From positions 1 to 64,000 of the IMG/VR virus record IMGVR_UViG_3300044700_000691: DNA of 64,000 bases; one strand, 5' to 3'. Positions 10,063 through 25,555 of this stretch are shown here, in pieces. A program made the translations under genes and the position numbers. Positions within the stretch are counted from its first letter, which is position 1; each line of letters starts with the position of its first letter. Below the pieces are notes generated by a model. The model was not told the DNA's origin. It was given only the letters and a program-made list of their open reading frames with translations, and ran no database searches.

Positions 10063-10127
10063 ATTATATCCAGTTTAAGATTTTAAATAATACTTTCGCG
10101 ACTATAAAGAACACGATTATCTTTAGG

Positions 10128-10158: not shown

Positions 10159-10167
10159 AGAGGCTGG

Positions 10168-10470
10168 TCATATGCTGCTGTTGAAAAATAGCTTTACCTC
10201 TTTACGACCTCTAGTATTACCAAGCTTTACCTCGCTCTCGGTAATTTCTATTTCAATTACCCTGACCCCATTTGCAAAATGGTGCTTATCAAATCTGAGT
10301 CTCCCTTCGTTGGTAAATCTCTCGACAACTTCGCCACCTCTTAGCCTGCTAAACTCGGCCTCGCTAAGGGTTAACTCTTGCCCAATACTCCAGTGGACAG
10401 GCTTTACACTACGACCTGACTCTTCGCGAATAGGTTCGGTAACGGTTAATTTAAATTCTTTGTGTATCAT
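10168..10470 (-). CDS. hypothetical protein, 100 aa
   Basis: ORF behind cassette 10492. Confidence 0.7.
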   Translation of the reverse strand: MIHKEFKLTVTEPIREESGRSVKPVHWSIGQELTLSEAEFSRLRGGEVVERFTNEGRLRFDKHHFANGVRVIEIEITESEVKLGNTRGRKEVKLFFNSSI

Positions 10471-10491
10471 CGTATATCATTTAGTTATAGA

Positions 10492-10538
10492 GTAAATATA
10501 ACCAATTAACTTGACACCCAAAAATAAAGTTATTAACA
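10492..10538 (-). promoter_or_regulatory. early promoter cassette
   Basis: TATATTTAC, with TGTTAATAAC about 20 bp closer than in most copies. Confidence 0.75.
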
Positions 10539-10718
10539 ATTATCCCAGCTAGTCGGGCTATCTTCAGCTGTTACCTGCCAAAACTGGCCAAGGTTATCGC
10601 GCACAGTTAGCACGTCTGGTGCTACTACTTCTACAATACCCGTGATAGGGGCTTCTAGCTCTTCGAATTTCTGTAACCATTGGATAGTATCTCCCGGTTT
10701 AAAGTCTTGTATCTGCAT
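10533..10718 (-). CDS. small SH3/KOW-like protein, 61 aa
   Basis: FKPGDTIQW...GIVEVV pattern. Confidence 0.65.
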   Translation of the reverse strand: MQIQDFKPGDTIQWLQKFEELEAPITGIVEVVAPDVLTVRDNLGQFWQVTAEDSPTSWDNC

Positions 10719-10721
10719 ATG

Positions 10722-11027
10722 TTATAGTTTGTTTATAGCTGCTTCGCGTTTAACCCGATAGAATAACTCAGCAGCCCATTCATATTCTTCCCTAGCAACC
10801 GCCACGTCGAGCGCAGTAATACAGGCATGGTATAGAGCATGTAATAAGTATTCAAGATACTCTGCACTCCAATCCTCTTCGCCTGCTGTTTTACCTAGGT
10901 CTTCGACTATCTTGCCTAGACAGTGGCGTATCGCCTGCTGGTCTCGACCTACTCCTTCCAGCCCAGTAAGGATTCGGTCTTTAATTAGTGTAGATAAGTA
11001 TTCAGGCATCTCCTTTTGGTTTAGCAT
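10722..11027 (-). CDS. hypothetical protein with UVR-like motif
   Basis: AVAREEYEWAAEL. Confidence 0.7.
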   Translation of the reverse strand: MLNQKEMPEYLSTLIKDRILTGLEGVGRDQQAIRHCLGKIVEDLGKTAGEEDWSAEYLEYLLHALYHACITALDVAVAREEYEWAAELFYRVKREAAINKL

Positions 11028-11033
11028 TATAGT

Positions 11034-11041
11034 TATTATAC
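11034..11041 (-). promoter_or_regulatory. middle-class promoter box GTATAATA (representative; also at 9827, 18326, 19157, 33941, 38341, 40537, 41136, 47538, 48458, 63979)
   Basis: exact 8-mer just upstream of minus-strand non-structural genes. Confidence 0.6.
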
Positions 11042-11094
11042 TAGGCTAGGGGTATAGGTTTACCTGCGCAGAGTAGGTACAGGGCTAGTGCAAT

Positions 11095-11492
11095 ACCTCC
11101 TGCTGGACCGGCTGGAGACCTGCCTGGAGCTGCTGGTCAGGCTAGCCCAGGAGGCTATATAATACCTACCCAGGACCGGTCTGGTACTGCTCCTGGCTGC
11201 CCTGGGGACCGTCCTGGCAGCTGTCTCCAGGTGACTCCTGGGGTACACCAGGACAGGTCCAGACTGCTCCTGGGTGACCCTGGGGAGCTGTCCAGGGGCT
11301 GCCCCGGGGCCTATCCCTGGTATAAGTTTTTGTAGCCAGGGGGAAGCAAGCATTTTTACTTTTTTCTCTTGTCTCCCCGGCTTGGCTAGTGGTCCAGACC
11401 TTTTTGCCTAGATTCATTTATCCAGGGGCTTTTCCTCGGGGCATTTCTACTGGTGGCGAATTTCCCCTGGCTTGGGGGCTGTTGTCCAGGTC
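11095..11492. repeat. GC-rich non-coding array of 17 CCWGG motifs at the strand switch
   Basis: CCWGG at 11123, 11147, 11170, 11192, 11201, 11213, 11227, 11237, 11248, 11269, 11279, 11292, 11316, 11336, 11422, 11466, 11486. Confidence 0.8.
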
Positions 11493-11500
11493 TTTTGCTA

Positions 11501-11507
11501 ATAAATA
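11501..11507 (+). promoter_or_regulatory. late-class promoter ATAAATA (representative; also + at 14318, 18367, 19195, 24669, 25548, 28288, 33961 and - at 13964, 32561, 33122, 42451, 46450, 50213, 53610, 57118, 63909)
   Basis: resembles T4 late TATAAATA; precedes structural and leader-bearing genes. Confidence 0.65.
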
Positions 11508-11532
11508 TCTTTATAACTATAACAATATTATT

Positions 11533-11958
11533 ATGAACAGGATTAAAAGATTTAGTGAGTATCTAGTAGAGGCAGTAGCCTTAGATCAATTGGCTACTCA
11601 ATTAGGTGGTACCGTGGAACCTATCGAGGGGGTAACAGACTGGTCAGCAGTTAGAGGTTATCTAGATATTAACCGTGAAAAACTTAAGACCAGCTTAGAA
11701 AAGGCAACTGGAGATAAGATAACTGCCATGGTAGTTATTAAGGTTACTGATATCTATGCTGAAGACAAGAGGGACGGGGTAACTCCTGATCCAGACTGGT
11801 TAGGTGCAGATCCAATTGTAGACGATGCAACTCCAGATCTACAAGAAATGGTTAAGGTAGTTATTTCAGCAATACAGCAGAGTCTTGCTAAATCCGATAC
11901 AGCAACCCTAGCTAAGTTTAGTACAGCAGGTAAAGGCATCAAAACAAGTAGATATTAA
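11533..11958 (+). CDS. putative capsid-internal protein (leader MNRIKRFSEYLVE), 141 aa
   Basis: start moved from 11389 to the ATG after the late promoter; capsid-targeting-sequence (CTS)-like leader. Confidence 0.75.
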   Translation: MNRIKRFSEYLVEAVALDQLATQLGGTVEPIEGVTDWSAVRGYLDINREKLKTSLEKATGDKITAMVVIKVTDIYAEDKRDGVTPDPDWLGADPIVDDATPDLQEMVKVVISAIQQSLAKSDTATLAKFSTAGKGIKTSRY

Positions 11959-11961
11959 TCT

Positions 11962-12612
11962 ATGAAACATATCAGACTATACAAAGATTTTATTACCGAA
12001 GAGGTCCAGTCTGGTGTTGTGCACTGCAGTGGTAAAAGCTGTAACTGGAGTTGGAATCTAGCGGATGGCTTGGATGGCGGCGAAACCAATCCCTATCTAT
12101 GTCACAAGTGCTGGCATGACAATACCCCTGCTATTACCGAATCTGCGGATCCTTTCTGGACCCAATATGTTAGACTTGTTGATCTAGGTATGATTGATCT
12201 AGAGGATTGGAGCAAGATTAAAGATGATGTAGTATTGCTAGTTAAGGAGCGGTTAGCCAGTCACTACCCTAATTTAGATGTAGAAAAACTGGCATTTGAC
12301 GAAATCAGGATCCACCAGCAGGGTAAAGGCGGGCGCGATCCTTATTATAGTGTCTATATTGATAAGGGCGTTAACTATAGTTATAAGGTATGGAATTGCA
12401 GATTGGTAATTCGTTTTCAAAAGGCAGCCGGTCGACTTGATAGTAGTCAGCTTATTACGGTACCTGACTATTTCTGGGAAAGACCAATTGGTGGGTATCA
12501 ATGGATACCAAGCACGGTTGCACAGAGTAGGTGGATAGCAGACGAAATTATCAAGTGGATGGACAAGGTCTTTGTACCATTTATCGGTGTTGAAATAGAA
12601 GAAACCAACTAA
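11962..12612 (+). CDS. putative capsid-internal protein with N-terminal Cys cluster (zinc ribbon)
   Basis: leader MKHIRLYKDFITE; CxxxxC...CxxC; RLVDLGM motif. Confidence 0.75.
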   Translation: MKHIRLYKDFITEEVQSGVVHCSGKSCNWSWNLADGLDGGETNPYLCHKCWHDNTPAITESADPFWTQYVRLVDLGMIDLEDWSKIKDDVVLLVKERLASHYPNLDVEKLAFDEIRIHQQGKGGRDPYYSVYIDKGVNYSYKVWNCRLVIRFQKAAGRLDSSQLITVPDYFWERPIGGYQWIPSTVAQSRWIADEIIKWMDKVFVPFIGVEIEETN

Positions 12613-12614
12613 CT

Positions 12615-13187
12615 ATGAAATATTTAAAACCATACCGCCTATTTGAATCCGCTGAAGAGATTGCCGCAGCTAGGCGCATGTTGGCACTAGGCTTAATAGA
12701 ACCCGAGGATTTTAAACAGAAATTACAGGAGCTTGGTTTGGATAAACAGTATCGTAGCGAATTTGTTGCCGCCCTCAAGACCCTATTTGCGGATCTTGGG
12801 CTAGAGTGGCGGGATTGGGCAACAGGCCGCCAGGCGGATAATGGTACAGTCGTGCTTAAAATTAGCCCAGCTGATGCAGCCGAAATTCTCTTTACTGCTG
12901 ACTTGCCTAAGGGCTTAAGCCCTGCTCAAGAGGCACGCTATGCAAAGATAAAAGGGGAGCTGCAGCAGTGGCAGCGTCAAATGGAGATGGAGACCTCATT
13001 GAGCTCTAGGTTTGAATACTGGATTTTCCCAGGTTCTCTACGTAACTCTGGTCGAATTGGCCAACCAACCTCTAACCGTCAGGTTATATTCGATGGCTTA
13101 ACTGAGCCGGGTACAGCCCTGGCCAGATTTATGTACCAAGTTGCACTTGATGCCCATGGTCGTAGTTGGCGCTGGGGTAGGCGCTAG
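12615..13187 (+). CDS. putative capsid-internal protein
   Basis: leader MKYLKPYRLFE; RMLALGL motif. Confidence 0.75.
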   Translation: MKYLKPYRLFESAEEIAAARRMLALGLIEPEDFKQKLQELGLDKQYRSEFVAALKTLFADLGLEWRDWATGRQADNGTVVLKISPADAAEILFTADLPKGLSPAQEARYAKIKGELQQWQRQMEMETSLSSRFEYWIFPGSLRNSGRIGQPTSNRQVIFDGLTEPGTALARFMYQVALDAHGRSWRWGRR

Positions 13188-13253
13188 GCCTCACCACTCT
13201 TAACCCCAACCCCCTTGCGCGGGCGCACTCGGCGGGGTCCAGGAATACTGCAT

Positions 13254-13278
13254 AAAAAAAGAGGCTAGGCGCCTCTTT
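13254..13278. terminator. terminator between convergent genes
   Basis: AAAGAGGC/GCCTCTTT stem with an A run on the left. Confidence 0.65.
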
Positions 13279-13305
13279 AGTAATTTAAGATATAGGTGAG
13301 TCTAG

Positions 13306-13941
13306 CTAGGCTAGGTCTCCACCAATAAGATCCGCCTCAACCTGGGCTGGGGTCTTATCAAAATTTTCTCGCCAGTAATCAACTATAGTTTGGCCCTCAG
13401 TTGCCTGTTTATTATAGGTTACTTCACCATGTCCCCAAACTGCATCCTTTTCATAACCAAGATATTTCATTAGTTTAAAAGCTGCAACCACCTGGATAGG
13501 TAAAACATCAGCATCGTCTTTAGCAATAACCTCTACGCCCTGAGCAGTTTGATTCTGCAAGTCATGTGGGGCATCCTTTTGATCACTATGACCAGCATGC
13601 CAGCCAACTACACCATCAGGTAAGGTTTGAAATACTTTACCATCACGATCAATAACCCACTGGACTCCAAGTCCGCGATCATTTAAAACATTAACTACAT
13701 CCTCAGCACGGCCTCGACCTGCAGTATGGTGTACAACAAAATATTTGTCGTCTTTTAGCGGGTCCATTCGTGGCTGGGTCGCTTGGGCTGAAATATCTTC
13801 AATTTCTTGTTTAAACTCCTGTTTAAATTCCGAATCTGAGACTTCGGCAGAGTCTGCTCCCGGTTCGCCAGTAAAGGCAGACTTTACCTTATCTGCGATA
13901 TCGCCTAACCAGCTTTCAAATAATTTAATGTGTTGTGGCAT
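13306..13941 (-). CDS. N-acetylmuramoyl-L-alanine amidase (Amidase_2) with CTS-like leader
   Basis: VVHHTAG, WVIDRDG, GWHAG, GVEV and WGHGE motifs; leader MPQHIKLFE. Confidence 0.85.
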   Translation of the reverse strand: MPQHIKLFESWLGDIADKVKSAFTGEPGADSAEVSDSEFKQEFKQEIEDISAQATQPRMDPLKDDKYFVVHHTAGRGRAEDVVNVLNDRGLGVQWVIDRDGKVFQTLPDGVVGWHAGHSDQKDAPHDLQNQTAQGVEVIAKDDADVLPIQVVAAFKLMKYLGYEKDAVWGHGEVTYNKQATEGQTIVDYWRENFDKTPAQVEADLIGGDLA

Positions 13942-13976
13942 CCTATAATAGATTTATTTGAGTTATTTATTTGCCA

Positions 13977-14255
13977 CTATTCAGTCTGATGATCATAGTA
14001 CTGACTAAACTGAATAAATGCTGGTGGATTGACCTCGTTTAGCCACTCGAGCGTAAATTCAGTACGGGCAATTGTAACATTGGCAATAAATAGTTCGGCA
14101 TGCAGCGAATCAATTAGGGCCTCGCGCTGTTCAATAAATTGCTTTTGTGCGGCGACTTGCCCAGCCAGTTTGCGGTTTGACACAATTGAGCTAACCGCAA
14201 TGGTTAAAAGTACTAACCCAGTTGCAACGGCGGCAACAATACTTGATTTTTTCAT
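13977..14255 (-). CDS. N-terminal TM/signal plus coiled-coil protein
   Basis: hydrophobic N-terminus. Confidence 0.7.
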   Translation of the reverse strand: MKKSSIVAAVATGLVLLTIAVSSIVSNRKLAGQVAAQKQFIEQREALIDSLHAELFIANVTIARTEFTLEWLNEVNPPAFIQFSQYYDHQTE

Positions 14256-14347
14256 TATATTAAATTTTGTTCAAGATCTTATACCTAAGTATAATAAACA
14301 AGATCTTTCCTGGAAAGATAAATAACTACAAATAAACTAAAAAGTTA

Positions 14348-15892
14348 ATGGAAATTAAGAAATACCACGATTGGTTATTTGAAAAACAAAACCCAATTAG
14401 CGAGTGCGGTTGTGCAAGTCACTCATTTATTACCGAAAGTATTAGTATTGACCAGGTAATGGCCAATCACGAAGCAAATGCGATTCAACCAATTGACGAA
14501 GCCGGCGAGACATTTGGCCCGTTTGTTGCAGGCAAAGGCGGAAACTCTAAAGATATTTTATGTCTTTATGGATCAGGTTACTATTCAGTAGACCATACAA
14601 CCAAACCAAAGGTTGGCGAGCCTAAAACATTTAAAAACTCAGACAGATTTAAAGAAACTCTTGATAATATGATAGCTTTCCTTAAAGCGGAACCTGCTAA
14701 AACTTGGGTATCTAAAGTTATTATTAAATCTAGCGAATCAATTATTCCAAACTTTGATATGGAAGGCGGCACTGGCCAAAAGGCAACCGGTTGGTTATCT
14801 GAAAAGCGTAAAGAGAAAATTGCAGCATATGTTAGTGATGTACTTAAACCATTATTTCAGGCTGGAACTATTTCTAAATTACCAGAGGCTAGACTTATTT
14901 TTGAAGAGGCCAAAACCTTAACTGAACCGTCTGGCGGCTGGGATGATTATCGCACATGGATGAGAGAAGCTGACCCTGTAAAAAAGGCAGCAATGGCAAT
15001 TAATCTTGAATATACTAGACTTAAAAAGGGTTATGACGCAGATCAAAAAACAACTGTTCAATTTATAGTAGTTCAAGATGCAGGAATAGGTCAATGCGCA
15101 TTAGGTATGAAAATTTATGTTAACTATGATGATACAACAATTGGTCATTCATGTGACCATGCAAATTTTGAAATAACCGTGAATGGAATTCCTCTAAAAA
15201 CTTCATATGGTGGAAAGACTGAGTCGGGCTATATTCCAGCCGGTCTGCCTTTTGCAAGTATGAGTAATTCAAAAGGGCCAACCGATGAATTATACAAAGT
15301 CTATAGCGGTGCGGTTAACGGCGGTGTTAGACGAAACGTATTTCGTTTAGATGATGCTGCCCTAGTTAAGAAAATTGCATCAGCCGGCGACGGTAAGACA
15401 CTGGTAGTTAGAGCTAGGTGTATAAAAAATGGTGATGGCTATAGTGTACCTAAAGGGTTAGCTTGTCATACAGATGCACCTCACGTATGGATATATGGAT
15501 CTGACGGTAATATTACAAAAGGTTTCCCAACTTATCCTAAAACTGATAATGGCGAACTTGCTAAAACTGACCTATGCGGAAATAACCTAGGAGTTCAAAA
15601 TACAGCGGTTCCAAAAAGTGCAGACGCTAAAGGAGCAGTTACTACTGCAACCGGGCCTACCTTAACTGGAGTTAAAGTAGCATTTGCAGCAAATAAAGTT
15701 GGAACACTTAATTCTGACCAAGCTCTTCAAAATTACCTAACAAACGGCACAGTTGCTAAACAAAAAGATAATACCTATCTAGTAAATAAGGTATTTACAA
15801 TAAATAATGTTCAATACAATAAAGGTGATGTTATTAATAAAATTTTACCTAAGGGAACAGTTATAGCTCAGCCAGCTGTCCCTAACAGTTAA
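14348..15892 (+). CDS. putative virion/ejected protein, 514 aa, with a possible OmpA-like peptidoglycan-binding region
   Basis: leader MEIKKYHDWLFE; IKSSES..PN...LSEKR pattern; several Cys. Confidence 0.7.
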   Translation: MEIKKYHDWLFEKQNPISECGCASHSFITESISIDQVMANHEANAIQPIDEAGETFGPFVAGKGGNSKDILCLYGSGYYSVDHTTKPKVGEPKTFKNSDRFKETLDNMIAFLKAEPAKTWVSKVIIKSSESIIPNFDMEGGTGQKATGWLSEKRKEKIAAYVSDVLKPLFQAGTISKLPEARLIFEEAKTLTEPSGGWDDYRTWMREADPVKKAAMAINLEYTRLKKGYDADQKTTVQFIVVQDAGIGQCALGMKIYVNYDDTTIGHSCDHANFEITVNGIPLKTSYGGKTESGYIPAGLPFASMSNSKGPTDELYKVYSGAVNGGVRRNVFRLDDAALVKKIASAGDGKTLVVRARCIKNGDGYSVPKGLACHTDAPHVWIYGSDGNITKGFPTYPKTDNGELAKTDLCGNNLGVQNTAVPKSADAKGAVTTATGPTLTGVKVAFAANKVGTLNSDQALQNYLTNGTVAKQKDNTYLVNKVFTINNVQYNKGDVINKILPKGTVIAQPAVPNS

Positions 15893-15918
15893 TAGTATCA
15901 AGCTTAATATAAAACAAC

Positions 15919-15946
15919 AAAAGTCCTGCCAATGGCAGGACTTTTT
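15919..15946. terminator. bidirectional terminator
   Basis: AAAAGTCCTGCC-AAT-GGCAGGACTTTT between convergent genes. Confidence 0.85.
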
Positions 15947-15962
15947 ATTTAAATAGAGTCAA

Positions 15963-16364
15963 TTATAATTTAGAACCTGTGTAGTGGATAACACTTTCCA
16001 TATTGGATATGTGCAATACTACGGCAGTCGTGTTATTATCTGTAGTAAAGAATTCAATATTGTAGAATTTACCAGATAAATCGTTGATTACAAAAAGCTT
16101 AATAGTAGTTTCGGTAAATCCAGTTGAAGTAGTTAGGACCCGATAGTTAGTTTCTTTACCAATATCGTCAGTTAATACTACACAGCTGTCAGTGATTAAG
16201 GCCGATGATTTAGTGTTAATTTGATTACTCCATACTAAATATCCATTAACTTTACTAACACTTGCAGTTTCAACTGCACTTAAACTTAAGTTAATTTCGG
16301 TAGTTTGCGAAAATACTGTGATTGACGCTAAACAGGTTAAGATAGTTAAAATTTGCTTTTTCAT
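15963..16364 (-). CDS. secreted beta-rich protein with signal peptide
   Basis: MKKQILTILTCLASITVFSQ (Bacteroidota-style signal ending before Q). Confidence 0.75.
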   Translation of the reverse strand: MKKQILTILTCLASITVFSQTTEINLSLSAVETASVSKVNGYLVWSNQINTKSSALITDSCVVLTDDIGKETNYRVLTTSTGFTETTIKLFVINDLSGKFYNIEFFTTDNNTTAVVLHISNMESVIHYTGSKL

Positions 16365-16399
16365 ATTAAATCTAATTTTGGTTAAATTTAATATACTAA

Positions 16400-16771
16400 C
16401 TACTCTGCGCCTTTGGCAAGTTCATATTGTTTTAGGAATTCCCAAGTAGATTCATGAGAATAGCAAATAGGTTCGCCATTTTCGTCATGTGCTCCCCACC
16501 TGTCCCCTTCGACTTTAACCATTTTGCCATCGACCTTTTTATAACTTGGGGTTTTGCTAAAATCTTTGGTGCCAAAGTCAGCTTCCCACATAAACCAGGT
16601 TAGCCAGTCGACACCCTCGGGAGTCCAGATTTCACCCAATAGGTTATGGATGATTGTACTATAAGGATCAGTAAAATCAATCAGGTCGACCCCTAATTTA
16701 TTGAGGTCTTCTAATTGTCTAGAGGTCTTTTGTAGACCCAGTGTCAGTTTTAAGAAATTTTCGTATGTCAT
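16400..16771 (-). CDS. hypothetical protein, 123 aa
   Basis: ORF in operon. Confidence 0.75.
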   Translation of the reverse strand: MTYENFLKLTLGLQKTSRQLEDLNKLGVDLIDFTDPYSTIIHNLLGEIWTPEGVDWLTWFMWEADFGTKDFSKTPSYKKVDGKMVKVEGDRWGAHDENGEPICYSHESTWEFLKQYELAKGAE

Positions 16772-17007
16772 GATTTATTATAAATTTTTTCTTCTAAAAA
16801 TTTTAAGAGTAGTCTCTTGTCTGCAAATGATAGCCGATCCGCTACTGCTAAATCAAGCTCATCTTCAGTTGCAGTTTCGCATAGTAGATCCAATTCATCT
16901 TCACTAATTCGGCAAGTCTCCTTAATTAGGGAATCAAATAGCCCAAACATGCCGCCTTGTCGGTCTTCACCTAGGTCAACTCCCTTTCTTGATAGTCTAG
17001 TCTTCAT
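16768..17007 (-). CDS. hypothetical protein, 79 aa
   Basis: ORF with 4-nt overlaps. Confidence 0.7.
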   Translation of the reverse strand: MKTRLSRKGVDLGEDRQGGMFGLFDSLIKETCRISEDELDLLCETATEDELDLAVADRLSFADKRLLLKFLEEKIYNKS

Positions 17008-17612
17008 GCTGATATGTATAAAATTGTTGGATTATCTTTATGTACATCAACCTCTGGAAATTCTTCCTTAAATTTTTGTAGATTAAATGGTCGACAAATA
17101 ATATGAACTCCGCTGCGAGTCTTAATAAAATCCATTCGTGGTTCTCCACCAATTTCAAGCTGTAGTTCAATAATCTTTTCTCTTAATGCAATCATATCAG
17201 GGCTATGATTAAATCCATCAAGCGAAATATTGTCAATATCAATTATCCAACTTTTGTTAGGTTCATTTGAGTAGGCTCCACAAACTGATTCATAAGCTTT
17301 ACGAACAGACCTAAAATCCCTGTTCATAATTTGATCAGTTATTTTCTTTAGGGTATGAAAAGCCATCCTTTCAAATGATCGACGATTAAGATTAATACAG
17401 GCTCGCGCTCCATGAAAATCGCAAAGTGCAATAATTTCTGGGCCAACTTTGGCTAAGTGGTCATGGGACTTAATATAATATGTCTTGACCACAAGCGAAT
17501 TTGATCCAATTTCTGGATGGTCCTTTTTACGCTTGATAATTTGTAGATGATAGAAATCATCATCACTTCGGAATTGAAGTAGCTTGGAAATTTGGCTAAA
17601 ATTATTAGTCAC
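17004..17612 (-). CDS. archaeo-eukaryotic primase (prim-pol)-like protein
   Basis: WIIDID (motif I) and KTRSGVHII (motif II). Confidence 0.55.
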   Translation of the reverse strand: MTNNFSQISKLLQFRSDDDFYHLQIIKRKKDHPEIGSNSLVVKTYYIKSHDHLAKVGPEIIALCDFHGARACINLNRRSFERMAFHTLKKITDQIMNRDFRSVRKAYESVCGAYSNEPNKSWIIDIDNISLDGFNHSPDMIALREKIIELQLEIGGEPRMDFIKTRSGVHIICRPFNLQKFKEEFPEVDVHKDNPTILYISA

Positions 17613-17923
17613 TAGTCATCTATTTTAAAGGTTAAGACCTTCCAGTTAAAGTTAAACCAAACTTTAATCCAGATTAGGTCGAATCCAATATACCAACTTG
17701 GCGATAGGTTTGACTTGGCAAACATCGCCTTACCCTTTTTACGGGTGCCGACTGCCATGTCTTTTTTAAACCAAATACCTAACTGATAACGTCGATGCCA
17801 TAGTGTAATGTCATCCATCATTTTGGTTGAGTATTCAGAATTTCGGTAATTTTCCCACTTGTGACGAATTACCATGGTCGCTTTAAAGTGACCTAAATTA
17901 AGTGATTTAACTATGCCAGCCAT
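17612..17923 (-). CDS. hypothetical Trp-rich protein
   Basis: ORF in operon. Confidence 0.7.
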   Translation of the reverse strand: MAGIVKSLNLGHFKATMVIRHKWENYRNSEYSTKMMDDITLWHRRYQLGIWFKKDMAVGTRKKGKAMFAKSNLSPSWYIGFDLIWIKVWFNFNWKVLTFKIDD

Positions 17924-18321
17924 TGATTAGTTAGTTGTATTAATAAGTATGAAAGTTTATATCCAGTAAAAGCACCCAGTGCACTAGGAATTGGAAACAC
18001 TACCAATTTACCAAGGTCAGTTACATATTTAGGTCGATTGACAATTCGGCCCATATAAAAATAATAGGTAATATAGCCGATAAAAACGGCAAGGTCTGTT
18101 CGCGTTGCAATAAACACCACTAGGGTAGCACCAATAAATCCAAAGAGAAAATTATCTCTTACCCCTTCCCAAACCTCAGCCGGACTAGCCTCTTGCCAAT
18201 CCCTGACAATTTGCTGTATTTTTGTTTTCTTTTTCATCTTAAATCGTGGATCGAGTTTTGTTACGATCGGTATATTTGCACCTTTAATCCTGTGCCACAG
18301 TTCCCAGTTAATGATCGACAT
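17911..18321 (-). CDS. membrane protein (about 3 TM)
   Basis: hydrophobic segments; GTATAATA box upstream. Confidence 0.7.
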   Translation of the reverse strand: MSIINWELWHRIKGANIPIVTKLDPRFKMKKKTKIQQIVRDWQEASPAEVWEGVRDNFLFGFIGATLVVFIATRTDLAVFIGYITYYFYMGRIVNRPKYVTDLGKLVVFPIPSALGAFTGYKLSYLLIQLTNQWLA

Positions 18322-18378
18322 GTTTTATTATACACAAATTAGGCTATTTGATCCTCTATTGCGCAAATAAATATAATT

Positions 18379-18936
18379 ATGAAAGCACTAAAATTTAAAC
18401 AGTTTCTTAACGAAGGGGTCTTTGATTCTCCAGAAGAAGAAAAGATAAAGGCCAGACTAGGTGAATTAGGCCTGCGCCCTAAGCGTGAAATTGATTTAGA
18501 CGATCCAACTTCTTGGCAAGGTCTACACTCAAATTGTTGTGGAGCTCAATTTAATTTAAACTACGGCGTTTGTTCAGACTGCGGCGATTTTGCAACTCCA
18601 GAAGAAGCTGACGCCGATTATGAAGGAGGCGACGTATATGAAAGTGAAGAGGATTCTGCTAAAATTGAAGACCGCCTTAGAGACCTAGGGCTTGCGCCTA
18701 AGGAAGAATTTGACGAGCGTTGGGATAATATGATAGACGAGTGGGGTAGCGATCCAGAAATTGACCAAGCAATCCAAGCTCTTAGAAGAAAAACTAGCGA
18801 AATTATCAATAAGCATATTGATTTTGGCGATCCGGAGGACGAAGTAGAGTGGGACCAACGCCGTGAATGGATGAACGAACAAGGTGTTGACGATCTTGGC
18901 GAACTAGAATTTATGATTGTACAAGGTAACTACTAA
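18379..18936 (+). CDS. putative capsid-internal acidic protein with internal duplication and Cys cluster
   Basis: leader MKALKFKQFLNE; RLGELGLRPK and RLRDLGLAPK repeats; SNCCGA...CSDCGD. Confidence 0.8.
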   Translation: MKALKFKQFLNEGVFDSPEEEKIKARLGELGLRPKREIDLDDPTSWQGLHSNCCGAQFNLNYGVCSDCGDFATPEEADADYEGGDVYESEEDSAKIEDRLRDLGLAPKEEFDERWDNMIDEWGSDPEIDQAIQALRRKTSEIINKHIDFGDPEDEVEWDQRREWMNEQGVDDLGELEFMIVQGNY

Positions 18937-19151
18937 TTCTTTACTGGCACCTTTCGTGCAACTTGTGGTTTTTCTATCTGTATTCTAATAGTATCGCCAG
19001 CCTGGTGTGCAGTTCTACAATACACAGTTCCTTCAATACAGGTTTCTGCATCATATACACTATATTGGTATGTACCTTGAAAATCTGGTGTACCTGAGCC
19101 AGATGTTACTACTAAAACCAAATACGTAAAAAGTTTTCCTAATTCTATCAT
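18933..19151 (-). CDS. small exported protein
   Basis: hydrophobic N-terminus; GTATAATA box upstream. Confidence 0.6.
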   Translation of the reverse strand: MIELGKLFTYLVLVVTSGSGTPDFQGTYQYSVYDAETCIEGTVYCRTAHQAGDTIRIQIEKPQVARKVPVKN

Positions 19152-19222
19152 AATTCTATTATACCTAATGTCAGACTAATAGTACTAGATCTGGATAAAT
19201 AACTACAAATAGGATAAATTCA

Positions 19223-19852
19223 ATGTCATACTTTAAAAAATTTGGTGCATTTATCAATGAAGACGAATCTTCCGAAGAGAAATTGGCCAAGCTTGCTAGA
19301 TTAAAGGAACTTGGTTTACTTGATACAGATCAATATAGACAAGATTCCAAGAATATCCGAAAGGATGCAATGCTTTCGGCTACGTCTAGAGGCGAACACG
19401 CAGGAACAGCGCTTCCGGAAATTAGAGAAGTTTTAGATTCACCAGAAGCTCAATTACTAAAGGCCAAAGGTCTTGCAGTAGTTTCAAGCCCAACTCAACT
19501 CTTAAATGGTACCCTTGTTTGGGCAAAACCGGGTTATACAAGATCAACTGGTTGGGGTATAGGATTTTTTCCCGGTCCAAGTAAAATTCGCAGAATGACT
19601 CCTAAAGGAATTAATATTGGAGTATGGGGCCGCCGTATAGGTTCAATGGATATCGAAATGAAAGCTATCCCAAAATCAGCGTACTCGAATGAAACTGAAT
19701 TTTATAGAGTTGCAATGAAATGGGCAGCTGAACATATTGATTGGGATCAATTGGAAATGGCTGAAAGAAAGAGTCGTGAAGATTGGAGATATTATGTAAA
19801 AGGAAAAACTAAACAAGGTTATTTTAACGATGAGAATAATAGAATCATTTAA
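19223..19852 (+). CDS. putative capsid-internal protein
   Basis: leader MSYFKKFGAFINE; RLKELGL motif. Confidence 0.8.
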   Translation: MSYFKKFGAFINEDESSEEKLAKLARLKELGLLDTDQYRQDSKNIRKDAMLSATSRGEHAGTALPEIREVLDSPEAQLLKAKGLAVVSSPTQLLNGTLVWAKPGYTRSTGWGIGFFPGPSKIRRMTPKGINIGVWGRRIGSMDIEMKAIPKSAYSNETEFYRVAMKWAAEHIDWDQLEMAERKSREDWRYYVKGKTKQGYFNDENNRII

Positions 19853-21461
19853 TAGCTGGAAACGTTCGAGCAGACTCTTAACTGAGAATGTTCAGGCAGC
19901 TAAGCAATATATGTTAAAACGTTTTGCACAAGCAAAAGGAATTGAAGTTTCTGAAATTGCGCCAGAGGATCAGGCTAGAGTTTTTGCAAATGAAGATTAT
20001 AAAAAAGTTCTTCAGTTAATTCAGCCACTTCCTGGATATGCTTCAACCTTTGTTAAATTTAAATTTGACCACCGAGTTTCATTTGAACAGTTGCAGCAAT
20101 TGCTTGATAAAATCAAAGCAAATTCCCAATTTCTTGGAGAATTATCAATTCCACTTATTGAGTTTCCAAATCAAGATAAAGTAAATGGAGTTCCTGCATT
20201 TGAAGCCTTAATGGATGAGTTTAGTCAAATTGAAACTCGCCGTAAATCAAAATGGATTCTTAACGAATTGCCAGGAAATTTACGTAGAGCTGCTAGAGAA
20301 TTACCAAAAGAAGACTTACAGAGACTATTTAATGCAGCAACAATCATGAATGATTTAGGTCAAGAAGTTAAAGTGCGTCTCTTAAAGAAAGCAAAAGCTT
20401 TTACTAATCCAATTGATTTTATTGTTTATGCTGAAAGCTATGTTAAAGGTTACCTAAATTCTGATGTTCAAAGTAAAATTGATAAATTAGAAGAATTAGA
20501 ACCAGAAGGTTCTGTAATTTATGCAGATGATCGCTACTTAATGTTAAGTGCCCGAACTGAAAAAGCTCAAAAGGAATTATGTTCAGTTGCAAGTTGGTGT
20601 ATTAACAGAGGAAGTTTTAATAATAGTTCATATGGCGGAGGCGCTGTGCAAATTAATACATTTGATTTTGGTTTACCGCCAACTGATCCACGTCACCTAA
20701 TTGGAACAACTATTTCCTATGATGGTAAAGTTACATATAGTCATGATATTAATGATAAAAGTGTTAAACAAACTGACGATATTACTAAACACTTTAACCA
20801 GTTTGGCTATCCAGAAAAATTAATCAAAACCTTAATTACAGTATTTCCAATTGAAGCAATGATTAAAAAGGTAATTACTGAATTAAACCTTGATAAAAAA
20901 TCTCCAATCCAAGTATTGGAATCAGTTATTAAGGCAAGTTATAAAGTAAATCCAGAAGACGACCAAGAATCTGCTAGAGTAATTCTTAATATCCTAATGG
21001 AAAGAATTGCACCAGCAGTTAAGGAAGAAGAGATTGTTACTCTATATATGAAGTTTGGTGTAATGTCAATTTTCTCTGCTAAACTATTTAATATGTTACT
21101 TCCAAATATTAATCCTCAAACCAAAGCTGAGGTTATTCAAAATGCAAAGGCAATTTTAGATGAGATTAAAGGTTATGCCAGTACTGGATTATTTAAATAT
21201 CCACAATTACTAAATGCCGTTAAGAGTGAACCTAAAATTTTAGAACTACTTGGTGAAAGTATTGTAAATGAGTTCTATGCAGCTGAACCTGCAATTAAAG
21301 AGCCAGTAACTAAACCTAAAGTAACACCAAGACCAGGGCCAATCCCAACTAAAAAACCATCAGTTAAGCCTGAACCAAGCGCAACTGCTGAAGATGTTAT
21401 TAAGAGGTTTGAAATGGAATTAAAAAAATTAGGTACTACACCAAAGGAATTCCTTAAGTAA
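19830..21461 (+). CDS. large putative capsid-internal protein, 543 aa (helical, with WC motif)
   Basis: leader MRIIESFNSW...LLTE; ELCSVASWCI; Pro/Lys-rich linker. Confidence 0.8.
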   Translation: MRIIESFNSWKRSSRLLTENVQAAKQYMLKRFAQAKGIEVSEIAPEDQARVFANEDYKKVLQLIQPLPGYASTFVKFKFDHRVSFEQLQQLLDKIKANSQFLGELSIPLIEFPNQDKVNGVPAFEALMDEFSQIETRRKSKWILNELPGNLRRAARELPKEDLQRLFNAATIMNDLGQEVKVRLLKKAKAFTNPIDFIVYAESYVKGYLNSDVQSKIDKLEELEPEGSVIYADDRYLMLSARTEKAQKELCSVASWCINRGSFNNSSYGGGAVQINTFDFGLPPTDPRHLIGTTISYDGKVTYSHDINDKSVKQTDDITKHFNQFGYPEKLIKTLITVFPIEAMIKKVITELNLDKKSPIQVLESVIKASYKVNPEDDQESARVILNILMERIAPAVKEEEIVTLYMKFGVMSIFSAKLFNMLLPNINPQTKAEVIQNAKAILDEIKGYASTGLFKYPQLLNAVKSEPKILELLGESIVNEFYAAEPAIKEPVTKPKVTPRPGPIPTKKPSVKPEPSATAEDVIKRFEMELKKLGTTPKEFLK

Positions 21462-21462
21462 T

Positions 21463-22752
21463 ATGAAAACAATAAAACAATTTTTACAAGAGGCAAGTTT
21501 ACAGGGAAATCCTGGCACGCCTGGCGAATATTTAAAAGGAGTTGAACGCCGAGCAATGCAAGATGTTCAAGGTACTGAGCAGAGACTGGGCAGAGAAATG
21601 GGTCAGTTTATGCAGTTGGTTGGACAAGTTCAGCAAATGCAAACCCCTCAGGTTAAGGCTCAATTAGAAAAACTTGCAGAATATATTATTTTGCAACAGT
21701 ATGGTTCAATCTTGGGTCAAACTAAATTAATTATTAAATTTCCAAAAGAGGGAGAAATCCAACAAATGATGGAACCAGTTGAAATGGAAACACCAGCTGA
21801 CCAAAAGGAAATTACTGATGCAGGTACAATTGCCGCAATTAATAAACGTAAAATAGGCAATGCAATTATGCAGGGCGAAGCTAAAAATGCAAAACTTATG
21901 TTAGCTTTACCTGAAACTATGGATGGAATGATTAAGATTTTTGGACCAGCTGGTGCTGCAAAAATGATAGATCTTCTTAAGAAAATTACAGATATTGCAT
22001 CTGCACTTGATTGGAGAATTCCAATGGAAGTTCAAAAGCAGATGTGGGAACGAGATAAGAGTGGATTTAGTGGTTCAGTTGATGTTGATTGGAAACCAAT
22101 TAAGAATGACGAGCAAACTGCAGACGAAATCATTAAGTCCTTAGAGAGTGGAGATATCCAAACTCCAGAAATCGAAGATTCGCTTAATGAAATGGAACCT
22201 ACCATTACTGCACTTGGTACAGATTTTGCAATGTTATTACATGAAACAATTAAAGGTATTTACAAATTAATTGGTGCTGCTGCAATTCCCGAAGATGAAG
22301 AAGAGGCAGAAAAGGTGATTGCAAGTACTGGAACACTTAGCGATGAATTAGAAGATTTAAGATATGGGCCATATTTAGCGGCAGATCTTAGAGATTTTAT
22401 AAACAGATTTACAGATAACGTTGAGGTTGAAAATATTAGAGAACATGTATTTGGCAAACTAATGCAAATGGAATCTACGCAATTTTTACAGTTAATGAAA
22501 GAAATCTTTAGTGAAGATGCTGGAGCAACTGCAAAAATAAAAGATATTATTCTAGAAATTCAACAAGAGATAAAGGATTGGGAAAGAGGCCAATTTGATG
22601 AAGAGGTTCCAGATTTTGGAATGGCTCCTACTCAAAACGAACCAGCTGACCTATCACAATTAAGTAAAAGAGAAATTCAGGAATTACTGGATGCTGCTCT
22701 AGATGCAGGCGATTACGCTGAGGTTGGAAAACTTGCAAAATATTTAGATTAA
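21463..22752 (+). CDS. putative capsid-internal protein, 429 aa, with HE motif and C-terminal UVR-like helix pair
   Basis: leader MKTIKQFLQE (close to T4 MKTYQEFIAE); LLHETIKG; LDAALDAGDYAEVGKL. Confidence 0.8.
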   Translation: MKTIKQFLQEASLQGNPGTPGEYLKGVERRAMQDVQGTEQRLGREMGQFMQLVGQVQQMQTPQVKAQLEKLAEYIILQQYGSILGQTKLIIKFPKEGEIQQMMEPVEMETPADQKEITDAGTIAAINKRKIGNAIMQGEAKNAKLMLALPETMDGMIKIFGPAGAAKMIDLLKKITDIASALDWRIPMEVQKQMWERDKSGFSGSVDVDWKPIKNDEQTADEIIKSLESGDIQTPEIEDSLNEMEPTITALGTDFAMLLHETIKGIYKLIGAAAIPEDEEEAEKVIASTGTLSDELEDLRYGPYLAADLRDFINRFTDNVEVENIREHVFGKLMQMESTQFLQLMKEIFSEDAGATAKIKDIILEIQQEIKDWERGQFDEEVPDFGMAPTQNEPADLSQLSKREIQELLDAALDAGDYAEVGKLAKYLD

Positions 22753-22753
22753 T

Positions 22754-23389
22754 ATGAAAATTAAAAGATTTAATCAATTTATAAATGAAAGCGACGGTTA
22801 TCTAGAAGAACCAGCCGATTCAGCATTTAACGAAATCTTAGAACAAATTGCAGATGGTATGGATAGCTGGAGCGGTTACCGGGCATATCTAGATGAAAAT
22901 AATAGCACGCTACATATTGATCAGGATTGGAATATTGATGACCTAAACTTTCAGGGCGAAGAACCTAGGGTTTATGCAAGTTATGCAGTTAGACTTAGGC
23001 TTGCTTTTCAAGATGATGAATCCGAATTATCACCAGAATTAGTTAGACTTTGGAAATTGGGCTTAGCCCCAGTTACAGATTTAATTAAAGGATTTAACCA
23101 TTCATGGGCATTTCAAATTGATTCAAAGGACGTTTCGCAATTAGACATTGCCGATGGCGATTTAAGTAGTTATGAATTTATATCAATTGAAGATCTTACT
23201 GGCGGTTCCATGAATAATTTAGATGATATTGACTCTTTTTGTAGTGAACTTGTAGAAACTCTTAACGATTGGCGAGATGAAAATACTTGGATGTTACACG
23301 AGAGAGTTCAAGAAGAATTAGACGAAATCTCTGGACCAAATGAAGACGATGAAGAAGACGACGACGAAAAAGATCCTGATAAAGATTAA
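22754..23389 (+). CDS. very acidic putative capsid-internal protein
   Basis: leader MKIKRFNQFINE; D/E-rich; RLWKLGL motif. Confidence 0.8.
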   Translation: MKIKRFNQFINESDGYLEEPADSAFNEILEQIADGMDSWSGYRAYLDENNSTLHIDQDWNIDDLNFQGEEPRVYASYAVRLRLAFQDDESELSPELVRLWKLGLAPVTDLIKGFNHSWAFQIDSKDVSQLDIADGDLSSYEFISIEDLTGGSMNNLDDIDSFCSELVETLNDWRDENTWMLHERVQEELDEISGPNEDDEEDDDEKDPDKD

Positions 23390-24703: not shown

Positions 24704-25555
24704 ATGCAAAACATGCAAGTTAAACAATTTACTGACTGGATAACCGAAGCAATCGCACCAGCAAAGCCATATACAAAAAAACTGTCTGAGCTGAATCCTC
24801 AACGTAAATACATAGGTGATACTTATAATACAGACCTGTTTTTAAGGTTTAAGCACCTAGCCTCAATTCGTGATAAACACGGAAAAAGAATTGGAGTTGA
24901 GAAATGGTTTGAAATTGCGCAAATCGAAGACAAAGGATTTTATTCAGCCGCGTTAGCCGATCAAATGGGCCAGCCTGATGTTAGAGAATTATGGAGAGAC
25001 ATGATGGGTCGTAATGCAAGCAAAGTCAAGGGCCAAGTTAATTTTAAAGATCCATTTAAGGGAAACGAAGATACTGAAGATGAAGTTAGAGACCTAAGCC
25101 TTAGTGAAAGTATTGAAGAACCTATTACAATGTCAGCTCAACTGGATCCAAGCTGGACTCTAGTTATTACCTATCCAAATGATAGTTTATACAATACTAC
25201 TAAACCATACTTTGAAAAACTTGGAATTGCATTTGCCAATTTAGAAAATCAAACTATCTATTTTGATGGATCAGAGGTAAGCGAATCATATTTTACAAAG
25301 GATCATATGCTTGCGGTTGAGGCTCATGAAATTGGTCACTCAATTGCAAATCATCAAGGCGAACCTTACTATTCAACAAGACAGGAGCAGGAGGCAGATT
25401 GGCTTGGTATTAATCTATTAATTCAGCACAATAAAACAAAGGCTTCTAATCTATTAGCCGAAAGATTTAACCAACAATACAAAATGGATTACACAGAATT
25501 ATCTGATTCCGAGAAGCTTACTGAGTTCCTTGAAGATTACTTATCAGATAAATAA
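24704..25555 (+). CDS. putative capsid-internal protein with C-terminal zinc metallopeptidase domain
   Basis: leader MQVKQFTDWITE; AHEIGH...EQEAD. Confidence 0.75.
   Translation: MQNMQVKQFTDWITEAIAPAKPYTKKLSELNPQRKYIGDTYNTDLFLRFKHLASIRDKHGKRIGVEKWFEIAQIEDKGFYSAALADQMGQPDVRELWRDMMGRNASKVKGQVNFKDPFKGNEDTEDEVRDLSLSESIEEPITMSAQLDPSWTLVITYPNDSLYNTTKPYFEKLGIAFANLENQTIYFDGSEVSESYFTKDHMLAVEAHEIGHSIANHQGEPYYSTRQEQEADWLGINLLIQHNKTKASNLLAERFNQQYKMDYTELSDSEKLTEFLEDYLSDK

What the first reader, a model, noticed from the sequence alone, without database searches (positions are those of the whole stretch)
11962..23389. Second shared tag R-[LM]-x-x-L-G-[LM] about 10 residues after the predicted cleavage Glu
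Seen: ES-ADPFWTQYV-RLVDLGM (11962), ES-AEEIAAAR-RMLALGL (12615), EG-VFDSPEEEKIKA-RLGELGL and ES-EEDSAKIED-RLRDLGL (twice in 18379), ED-ESSEEKLAKLA-RLKELGL (19223) and ES-ELSPELV-RLWKLGL (22754), in otherwise unrelated proteins. Inference: a short amphipathic helix left near the new N-terminus after prohead-protease cleavage. It could be an ejection-order signal, a docking motif for the capsid wall or core, or a motif binding one host target. I do not recognise it as a described motif.
Basis: seen in the sequence. Interest (0 to 1): 0.7.

Follow-up and report, generated by a model that had tools for sequence, protein, structure and literature searches.

The report
Shared helix-turn tag on phage capsid cargo
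In an uncultured T4-like phage, several unrelated proteins that look destined for packaging inside the capsid share, besides their cleavable leader, a short R-L-x-x-L-G-L helix-turn-helix element. Its key charged residue has switched in step in all of them between phage lineages, which suggests that one common, still unknown partner reads it.

Summary
R-[LM]-x-x-L-G-[LM] occurs 7 times in the 216.8-kb genome against 0.15 expected. All seven sit in six proteins with a T4-type capsid-targeting leader (6/19 leader proteins vs 0/247 others). The proteins show no other similarity, and the codons of the copies differ, so conservation acts on the protein.

Structure prediction places the motif at the end of one helix plus the Gly turn of a roughly 30-residue helix-Gly-helix hairpin. 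This hairpin usually opens a mature cargo module. Five of the six window copies lie 9-13 residues after an h-x-Glu protease-type site. Gene splits and fusions in relatives show that the internal sites match leader ends. About half of all copies across relatives have no such site.

The motif recurs in relatives (15 copies vs 0.19 expected in one). Other lineages carry an acidic variant ([DEQ]-L-x-x-[LM]-G-[FLI]). The Arg-to-acid switch is concerted across four unrelated families. It accounts for 2 of only 5 such columns among 21,639.

My best reading is a cleavage-resistant docking tag read in trans by one partner, which I could not identify. It resembles SHOCT in shape but fails that family's threshold. 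I found no description of it in the literature searched.

The parts
11962..12612 (+). Cargo gene (216 aa). It has a leader MKHIRLYKDFITE (aa 1-13) and a Cys-rich zinc-ribbon-like insert (aa 22-50). An internal protease-type site AITE|S has its Glu at aa 60 (nt 12139-12141). The motif module follows.
   Evidence: In relative G001 (locus L092) the orthologue has a leader ...IKPYRLVE|S directly before the motif and lacks the insert.
12172..12192 (+). Motif copy RLVDLGM (aa 71-77 of ORF 11962), followed by IDLEDW
12615..13187 (+). Cargo gene (190 aa) with leader MKYLKPYRLFE|S (aa 1-11). It also carries two weaker L-x-x-L-G-L units: KLQELGL (nt 12720-12740) and FADLGL (nt 12786-12803).
   Evidence: It is fused to the 11962 homologue in P0124 through an internal VTE|S site. 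Its only similarity to 11962 is the motif.
12675..12695 (+). Motif copy RMLALGL (aa 21-27 of ORF 12615), followed by IEPEDF. This is the copy that gives the weak SHOCT hit.
18379..18936 (+). Cargo gene (185 aa). The order of elements is: leader MKALKFKQFLNE|G, motif 1, Cys-rich zinc-ribbon-like stretch, internal site VYE|S (Glu at aa 88, nt 18640-18642), motif 2, acidic C-terminal domain.
   Evidence: In L004 the second half is a separate 109-aa gene with its own leader (FVNE|NEDDSSRIEDRLRDLGL). Orthologues are shown.
18454..18474 (+). Motif copy RLGELGL (aa 26-32 of ORF 18379)
18673..18693 (+). Motif copy RLRDLGL (aa 99-105 of ORF 18379), followed by APKEEF
   Evidence: The orthologous position reads RLRGLGL in G004 and G006, HLRNLGI in G009 and ELKSMGF in G005.
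19223..19852 (+). Cargo gene (209 aa) with leader MSYFKKFGAFINE|D and hairpin aa 17-55 (nt 19271-19387). The beta-rich domain that follows has no known fold match.
19298..19318 (+). Motif copy RLKELGL (aa 26-32 of ORF 19223). The model shows helix 17-29, loop 30-34 and helix 35-55.
   Evidence: The Gly (G31) is invariant in 33 homologues down to 37% identity, while the Arg varies between lineages.
22754..23389 (+). Cargo gene (211 aa, very acidic) with leader MKIKRFNQFINE|S. The motif is internal, and no conserved cleavage-type site lies upstream.
23045..23065 (+). Motif copy RLWKLGL (aa 98-104 of ORF 22754), followed by APVTDL
   Evidence: It is conserved as RLIQLGL in the G004 orthologue.

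Best explanation
SHOWN. R-L-x-x-L-G-L is the end of helix 1 plus the glycine turn of a roughly 30-residue helix-Gly-helix hairpin. A fuller consensus is [acidic helix]-R-L-x-[DE]-L-G-L-[IVA]-[DEP]-x-x-[DE]-aromatic. In this T4-like phage lineage it is strongly concentrated in proteins with a capsid-targeting-type leader. It typically forms the first folded element after a prohead-protease-type site (h-x-Glu). This holds both after the N-terminal leader and after internal sites in multi-module proteins.

INFERRED. Each mature cargo fragment therefore keeps one hairpin after the leader is cut off. The hairpin acts as a second, cleavage-resistant address or docking element that one common partner recognises in trans. 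The main argument is that the invariant Arg (with the flanking Leu residues) has been replaced by Asp, Glu or Gln in concert. This happened in several unrelated protein families of the same genome in other lineages, as expected if all copies must keep fitting the same partner.

UNKNOWN. The partner is not identified. Candidates are a persistent head component, the hairpins of other internal proteins, or a host factor met after ejection. Cleavage, packaging and binding have not been observed.
For: - Enrichment: 7 copies vs 0.15 expected in G000, and 15/0.19, 10/0.18 and 3/0.11 in relatives G004, G006 and G009.
- Restriction to leader proteins: 6/19 vs 0/247 in G000 and 8/23 vs 5/305 in G004.
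- Selection at protein level: Arg, Leu and Gly codons differ among the copies, and flanking DNA is 17-47% identical.
- Unrelated carriers: no BLASTP similarity, and the two AlphaFold2 models have different architectures.
- Same local structure in two unrelated proteins: H17-29 / loop / H35-55 in 19223, and H183-190 / loop / H198-255 in 177777.
- Module logic: 54% of 37 copies have [ILFVM]-x-E 3-14 residues upstream vs 27% background. Gene fission and fusion show internal sites equal leader ends. P0122 has three modules and P0126 two, each starting E|S...RLxDLGL.
- Concerted flavour: in leader proteins the core starts with R in 25/35 cases in G000, G004, G006 and G009, and in 0/11 in G005, G010 and G013 (Fisher 2.6e-5).
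- Four unrelated families (177777, 165764, 18379-C, 19223) all switch together.
- Among 21,639 gap-free columns of 67 conserved families, only 5 are basic in all R-genomes and non-basic in all E-genomes. Two of the five are the motif Arg of two different proteins.
- The Gly is invariant across 33 homologues of 19223 and 11 of 177777.
Against: - No partner was found. No conserved phage protein, the major capsid protein included, shows a complementary acid-to-base column.
- The R and acidic groups could each descend from a single switch. The capsid-protein tree is poorly resolved, so the independent events are few.
- About half of the copies are internal with no cleavage site, so 'tag at the new N-terminus' is not general.
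- In the models the hairpin has pLDDT of about 75-85, and in fissions and fusions it always travels with the downstream domain. It may therefore be an integral structural element.
- L-x-x-L-G-L-x-[DE] is also a generic helix-cap and hairpin sequence. Similar strings occur in an arylsulfatase and in a designed protein.
- Leader identification rests on a small HMM built from this genome.
- No experimental data exist for this uncultured phage.
Confidence: 0.42

Rival explanations
1. The motif is a purely structural element. It would be a favourable helix C-cap and alpha-alpha hairpin that starts many small domains. It was either inherited from an old N-terminal module spread by domain shuffling among internal-protein genes, or it converged, and it has no partner in trans.
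For: - The hairpin is modelled with fair confidence as part of each protein.
- It always moves with the downstream domain in gene splits and fusions.
- Similar strings occur in unrelated solved proteins.
- The 11962-type modules in P0122 and P0126 look like repeats of one domain that begins with the hairpin.
Against: - It does not explain why the motif is nearly confined to leader-bearing proteins.
- It does not explain why the exposed-type Arg is invariant over deep divergence in some lineages, yet is replaced by an acidic residue in four unrelated families at once in others.
Confidence: 0.25
2. The motif serves after ejection. It would be a short docking motif through which many injected proteins bind one host protein, such as a chaperone, a protease adaptor or a membrane or nucleoid factor. 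The R and E flavours would then reflect different hosts.
For: - No complementary change was found in any conserved phage protein.
- The carriers are diverse, mostly acidic cargo proteins. In T4, diverse internal proteins act against host defences (PMC3012670).
- The flavour differs between phage lineages.
Against: - The hosts are unknown. The only hint is Bacteroidota.
- Nothing ties the flavour to a host.
- The motif is part of a folded hairpin rather than a disordered linear motif.
Confidence: 0.15
3. The motif is a divergent SHOCT domain (Pfam PF09851), a known short two-helix module of unknown function, recruited to the start of phage cargo modules.
For: - Size and shape are the same: about 28-30 residues, two helices, a conserved Gly at the turn, and an acidic residue plus an aromatic early in helix 2.
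- The 12615 copy hits SHOCT at E 0.02-0.05.
- 2 of 21 copies hit at E<=5.
- hhalign of the motif profile against 27 true SHOCT domains aligns Gly to Gly over 24 columns with P 0.002. Reversed controls give 0.19-0.25.
Against: - The scores are far below Pfam's cut-off (13.7 vs 27 bits), and hhalign probability is only 13.7%.
- The SHOCT model scores unrelated phage ORFs higher (16-19 bits).
- The hydrophobic register of helix 1 differs.
- SHOCT is mostly C-terminal (PMC3581485), whereas this element opens modules.
- SHOCT's own function is unknown, so membership would not give a mechanism.
Confidence: 0.12
4. The motif is a substrate determinant for the prohead protease. A downstream helix would position or licence cleavage at the Glu roughly 10 residues upstream.
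For: Cleavage-type sites are enriched 3-14 residues upstream (54% vs 27%). Every module of P0122, P0124 and P0126 begins E|S and then carries the motif.
Against: - About half of the copies have no site upstream.
- Most leader proteins (13/19 in G000) and the capsid protein's own INE|A site lack the motif.
- The spacing ranges from 5 to about 22 residues.
- The protease family shows no column that co-varies with the flavour.
Confidence: 0.06

Closest known systems
T4 capsid targeting sequence (CTS) of internal proteins IPI, IPII, IPIII and Alt
   Same: Both are short sequences shared by otherwise unrelated proteins packaged in a T4-type head. Both occur in a genome with a gp21-type (Peptidase_S77) protease and h-x-Glu cleavage sites. 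The leaders of these same proteins look like CTSs (PMC3012670, PMC5694885).
   Different: The CTS is the N-terminal 10-20 residues and is removed. This motif lies after the cleavage site, or deep inside the protein, and would remain. T-even internal proteins are described as sharing 'only' the CTS (PMC3012670). Most carriers here are acidic, whereas T4 internal proteins are basic (the T4 point is from my own knowledge; the carriers' charge is).
SHOCT domain (Pfam PF09851 / PF20612)
   Same: Both are two-helix hairpins of about 28-30 residues with a conserved Gly at the turn and an acidic residue plus an aromatic at the start of helix 2. Both are fused to many different domains. There is a weak in-register profile match (PMC3581485).
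   Different: The match is below the family threshold. The hydrophobic pattern in helix 1 differs, and the Arg is not a SHOCT feature. This element sits at the start of modules rather than at the C-terminus, and it occurs in phage cargo proteins.
Cargo-loading peptides of encapsulins and the C-terminal helix-turn-helix coat-binding domain of P22 scaffolding protein (analogy, from my own knowledge)
   Same: In both cases a short conserved element on cargo or scaffold binds the inside of an HK97-fold shell. The P22 element is also a helix-loop-helix with essential basic residues.
   Different: No binding to the capsid protein has been shown or predicted here, and the capsid protein shows no column that co-varies with the flavour. 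Those elements are C-terminal, and there is no sequence similarity.
Processed multi-fragment head proteins of giant phages (phiKZ, 201phi2-1, SPN3US)
   Same: Many head and ejection proteins are cut after Glu by a related prohead protease, some at several sites (PMC5694885, PMC10052503).
   Different: In the papers I searched, no shared motif downstream of the cleavage sites is described for those phages. Their cleavage motif is A/S/G-x-E.

Membership tests
T4-type capsid targeting sequence (CTS) | Lies at the extreme N-terminus (10-20 residues) and ends in an h-x-Glu site cut by the prohead protease, so that it is removed | tested here: not met
   The motif begins 5-22 residues after the leader's Glu, or at aa 98-475 inside proteins. 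The leaders of the same proteins do fit the feature.
T4-type capsid targeting sequence (CTS) | The genome encodes a gp21-type prohead protease and a gp23-type capsid protein | tested here: met
   PF03420 scores 50 bits at 157862-158215(-). PF07068 scores 164 bits at 154746-156002(-).
T4-type capsid targeting sequence (CTS) | Sufficient to direct a protein into the prohead core | not testable with these tools
   This needs packaging assays, and the phage is uncultured.
SHOCT (PF09851) | Score at or above Pfam's gathering threshold (27 bits) | tested here: not met
   The best copy (12615) scores 13.7 bits. Only 2 of 21 copies hit at E<=5.
SHOCT (PF09851) | About 30 residues, two amphipathic helices, a strongly conserved Gly and a conserved Glu, with no indels | tested here: inconclusive
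   The helix-Gly-helix shape is modelled, and the Gly is invariant. An acidic residue plus an aromatic in helix 2 is common but not invariant. hhalign gives P 0.002 but probability 13.7%.
SHOCT (PF09851) | Predominantly at the C-terminus of proteins (89% within 50 residues of the end; PMC3581485) | tested here: not met
   Copies lie near N-termini or at the start of internal modules.
Shell-binding cargo tag (encapsulin loading peptide, P22 scaffold coat-binding domain) | Binds the inner surface of the HK97-fold capsid protein | not tested
   The capsid protein was never folded together with the hairpin. The only indirect check was for capsid-protein columns that co-vary with the R/E flavour, and none were found.

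The most novel reading that the evidence does not exclude
The hairpin is a second sorting signal that survives cleavage, a lineage-specific 'address code' (R-L-x-x-L-G-L versus [DE]-L-x-x-[LM]-G-[FL]). Each fragment released by the prohead protease carries it. It would hold or order the cargo inside the head, or hand it to one partner after ejection. Cargo genes moving between phage lineages would then have to match the recipient's code.
Probability: 0.3. Interest if true: 0.75.

Novelty: new variant of a known kind. Interest (0 to 1): 0.6.

Why it matters
In T4, the only element known to be shared by internal (injected) proteins is the cleavable targeting leader. What happens to the cargo after the leader is cut off is poorly understood: where it sits, in what order it leaves, and how it is recognised.

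A second, retained tag on about a third of the leader proteins (6/19 in G000) would give a handle on that question. The fact that it changes in step across unrelated proteins makes it more informative. It would also give a bioinformatic marker for finding cargo modules and internal cleavage points in uncultured large phages. If it proves to be a docking element, it could serve as a tool for loading or retaining foreign proteins in T4-type capsids.

The concerted charge switch is also a clean natural experiment for finding the partner by co-variation once more genomes are analysed.

Tried and rejected
- **Family searches.** Pfam and PHROGs on the ten neighbouring proteins gave no family that explains the motif. 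Only a weak phrog_26852 and a zinc-ribbon hit appeared.
- **Pfam on hairpin segments.** Only sub-threshold SHOCT hits resulted. The SHOCT model on the own genome and five relatives never crossed the cut-off, and its best hits were unrelated ORFs.
- **PDB profile search.** Nothing was significant. The FeoA, arylsulfatase and designed-protein strings were the only hits.
- **Foldseek with the 19223 model.** There was no PDB match, and only uncharacterised phage homologues in BFVD.
- **ESM Atlas on two hairpin segments.** No usable hit.
- **Profile search of 1.84 billion representatives.** It gave 9 hits. Two were spurious (a WD40 repeat protein and a repeat protein with ...SRLVxLGL). The rest were phage cargo-like proteins. 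A 33-position profile is too short to map the full distribution.
- **DNA repeat or gene conversion.** Rejected, because the codons are scrambled.
- **Full-length paralogy.** Rejected.
- **Capsid protein as co-varying partner.** No charge-swap column was found. The scan across 67-70 conserved families found no acid-to-base complement.
- **Complex prediction.** The 165764-family mature part was folded with mature 19223. The tool gave no verdict (score 0.21, mark 0.32), so this is no evidence either way.
- **More distant phages.** Lak-B5 megaphage and the 462-kb uncultured phage that share the capsid protein at 34-41% identity had no match to the motif profile.
- **Nucleotide and protein searches of the phage collection.** Megablast with 19830-23389 and tblastn with 19223 both found nothing.
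- **DNA binding.** I judge it unlikely, because the hairpins and most carriers are acidic.
Full report
**Context**

The window is the first 64 kb of a 216,815-bp IMG/VR virus record with 36% G+C. The genome encodes a T4-type major capsid protein (PF07068, 164 bits) and a gp21-type prohead protease (PF03420, 50 bits). Its capsid protein is only 34-41% identical to anything in the phage collection. The nearest are an uncultured 462-kb phage and the Lak megaphages. It is therefore a distant, uncultured T4-like lineage. Many IMG/VR relatives exist with 60-93% capsid-protein identity.

About 19-27 proteins of the genome begin with a leader of the form M-K-x-I-K-x-F-x-x-F-I-x-E. This resembles the T4 capsid targeting sequence, a 10-20-residue N-terminal propeptide removed after Glu by the prohead protease (PMC3012670, PMC5694885).

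**Observation**

In a 266-ORF proteome of 67,492 residues the pattern R-[LM]-x-x-L-G-[LM] occurs 7 times against 0.15 expected. The seventh copy is outside the window, at 177777-178559(-), and it also lies in a leader protein. A near-copy, RIHDLGL, sits in a conserved leader-bearing protein at 165764-166483(-).

All copies lie in leader proteins: 6/19 against 0/247, Fisher 6e-8. The carriers show no BLASTP similarity to each other. For the adjacent genes 11962 and 12615, the motif is the only alignable stretch. The seven copies use different Arg, Leu and Gly codons, and the flanking DNA is unrelated. The conservation therefore acts on the protein and is not a DNA repeat.

**Anatomy**

Aligned copies show three parts in sequence:
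- an often acidic helix, frequently starting with Ser or Asp;
- then R-L-x-[DE]-L-G-L;
- then [IVA]-[DEP]-x-x-[DE]-aromatic.

AlphaFold2 on the 19223 family (33 sequences, pLDDT 81) gives helix 17-29, loop 30-34 (LGLLD) and helix 35-55. On the unrelated 177777 family (11 sequences, pLDDT 81) it gives helix 183-190, loop 191-197 and helix 198-255. The motif is thus the C-terminal cap and glycine turn of a helix-Gly-helix hairpin. The Gly is invariant in both families, down to 25-37% identity. The rest of the two models differs, one being beta-rich and the other alpha/beta with a long terminal helix. The 19223 model has no fold match in the PDB.

**Relation to cleavage sites**

In five of the six window copies an [ILV]-x-Glu lies 9-13 residues before the Arg. 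Three of these sites are the leader's own Glu (12615, 18379 first copy, 19223). Two are internal (11962 AITE|S and 18379 VYE|S).

Natural gene rearrangements show that the internal sites are equivalent to leader ends:
- In relative L004 the second half of 18379 is a separate 109-aa gene whose leader ends FVNE| directly before the motif.
- In G001 the 11962 orthologue lacks the zinc-ribbon-like insert and has its leader directly before the motif.
- In P0124 the homologues of 11962 and 12615 are fused through ...VTE|SAEEV...RRMLDLGL.
- P0122 has three modules and P0126 has two, each starting E|S and then RLxDLGL.

Over four genomes, 20 of 37 copies have such a site 3-14 residues upstream, against 27% of control positions (p 5e-4). 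The other half, including 22754 and 177777, have none. The hairpin usually opens a mature module, but not always.

**Distribution**

The motif profile finds further copies in relatives, nearly all in other leader-bearing proteins. The strict pattern occurs 15, 10 and 3 times in G004, G006 and G009, against 0.1-0.2 expected. It occurs zero times in G005, G010 and G013. In those three genomes the leader proteins carry a variant: [DE]-E-L-x-[AS]-[LM]-G-F in G005, and [DEQ]-L-x-[DE]-L-G-L in G013.

In leader proteins, the flavour-neutral core x-[LM]-x-x-[LMIF]-G-[LMIFV] starts with Arg in 25/35 cases in the first group and in 0/11 in the second (Fisher 2.6e-5).

Orthologue alignments show the same split in four unrelated families:
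- 177777: RLAELGL / RLVKLGL against ELIEFGI / ELKELGL / QLSEIGL / ELADMGL / ELVEVGA
- 165764: RIHDLGL / RLHGLGL against ELEDMGF / ELLDMGI / DLFDLGL / ELFTVGV / QLFDIGL
- 18379-C: RLRDLGL / RLRGLGL against ELKSMGF
- 19223: RLKELGL / RLVDLGL / RLREIGL against ALRDFAI

I then scanned 67 conserved families (21,639 gap-free columns). Only five columns are basic in all R-genomes and non-basic in all E-genomes. Two of the five are the motif Arg in two different proteins. With the stricter basic-versus-acidic test, these two are the only such columns.

The capsid-protein tree does not separate the two groups cleanly, but it is poorly resolved. One switch per family on a shared branch therefore cannot be excluded.

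**Interpretation**

Three facts point to a constraint shared by all copies in a genome, most simply one common binding partner: the concentration in leader proteins, the one-hairpin-per-module logic, and the concerted change of a charged residue across unrelated proteins. In multi-module proteins only the first module has a leader. The hairpin is therefore probably not what brings the protein into the prohead. It is more likely to act after cleavage, in retention, positioning, ejection, or function in the host. All of this is inference.

I could not identify the partner. No conserved phage protein shows a complementary acid-to-base column. That leaves open homotypic contacts among the hairpins, a less simple interface, a non-conserved phage protein, or a host factor. 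DNA binding is unlikely because the hairpins and most carriers are acidic.

**Comparison with known families**

The closest described object in shape is the SHOCT domain. It has about 30 residues, two helices, a conserved Gly and a conserved Glu, and its function is unknown (PMC3581485). The evidence for membership is weak:
- One copy hits the Pfam model at 13.7 bits, against a cut-off of 27.
- Only 2 of 21 copies hit at all.
- A profile-profile comparison with 27 genuine SHOCT domains (loci; extracted) aligns Gly to Gly with P 0.002, but with 13.7% probability. Reversed controls give P 0.19-0.25.
- The SHOCT model scores unrelated phage ORFs higher.

Membership is therefore not established, and I do not file the motif there.

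Relative to T4, the leader corresponds to the CTS, but the motif does not, because it lies after the cut. The T4 literature states that the internal proteins share only the CTS (PMC3012670). Neither the full-text searches nor the papers I read turned up a shared post-cleavage motif. The motif profile finds nothing in Lak-B5 or in the 462-kb uncultured phage.

**Verdict**

The functional proposals remain open. The concerted-flavour result is the strongest new evidence that the element is read in trans. I rate it a new variant of a known kind (a shared sorting or docking element on phage capsid cargo), with interest 0.6.

Noticed in passing
outside the window: genome 156284-158272 (-) = L314:4284-6272: The prohead protease is the N-terminal domain (aa 22-161, Peptidase_S77/S80) of a 662-aa protein. 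Residues ~290-440 hold about 11 tandem 14-residue repeats (I-x-Y-[ST]-E-Y-[LV]-A-E-[KN]-...). Each repeat has an h-A-Glu cleavage-type site, with the Glu exactly every 14 residues. The repeat is also seen as 42- and 84-bp DNA repeats. It looks like a protease-scaffold fusion built to be cut into 14-mers.
   Followed up: partly
window leaders (e.g. 19223-19261, 22754-22789) compared with L314:4284-6272: The cargo leaders (aromatic, +3 aromatic, +4 hydrophobic, +6 Glu: F-x-x-F-I-x-E) have the same pattern as one unit of the scaffold repeat (Y-x-E-Y-[LV]-A-E). The leader may mimic a scaffold repeat, co-assemble with it and be cut at the same position. This rests on inspection only.
   Followed up: no
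window 10001-14000: An island of higher G+C (0.44-0.45, against about 0.35 elsewhere) covers genes 11533-11958, 11962-12612 and 12615-13187. This suggests that these cargo genes were acquired from a relative with higher G+C.
   Followed up: no
window 11962-12612 (aa 22-50) and 18379-18936 (aa 52-70): Cys-rich zinc-ribbon-like stretches (C-x-x-x-x-C ... C-x-x-C; weak PF18073 hit) sit between a leader and an internal cleavage-type site. They are absent from the orthologues in close relatives. They look like small extra modules that would be cut off.
   Followed up: partly
window 24704-25555 (+) and 32560-33117 (-): Two leader-bearing proteins look like enzymes. One has an HExxH metalloprotease-like region (weak M48/M78 and phrog_87 hits). 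The other has a HAD-type D-x-D-G-V motif right after the leader. Both are candidate packaged enzymes.
   Followed up: no
window 19223-23389 and relatives G004 153652-157893 (-): The gene order 19223 / 19830 / 21463 families is conserved in G004, with homologues also in G005. In G004 and G006 the 21463-family protein carries a motif copy near its C-terminus after MLKE|N, and G000 lacks that copy.
   Followed up: partly
outside the window: genome 168413-170026 (-) vs capsid protein 154677-156266 (-): A 41-residue stretch of the capsid protein's N-terminal region (aa 48-88) is 49% identical to aa 472-512 of a 537-aa protein in the head gene cluster.
   Followed up: no
outside the window: genome 158385-159020 (-): The gene next to the protease encodes a 211-aa protein with a sub-threshold match to the DnaJ C-terminal (substrate-binding) domain (20 bits, cut-off 26.6).
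   Followed up: no
outside the window: genome 194088-195341 (-); L203: The thymidylate synthase-like protein's best genome hit (59%) is on a 254-kb contig binned in a 'Bacteroidetes' MAG, probably a related phage. Several Saprospiraceae MAGs follow. This is a host hint towards Bacteroidota.
   Followed up: no
window 11389-11958: The listed ORF starts at a GTG (11389), but the leader-type start MNRIKRFSEYLVE at the ATG at 11533 is the likely true start.
   Followed up: no
P0121 (1472 aa, from the representative search): A very large protein without a leader starts with two tandem copies of ...EDDK[IL]KRLRELGLIDDEP.... The motif therefore also occurs as an N-terminal repeat on a giant protein of unknown context.
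   Followed up: no
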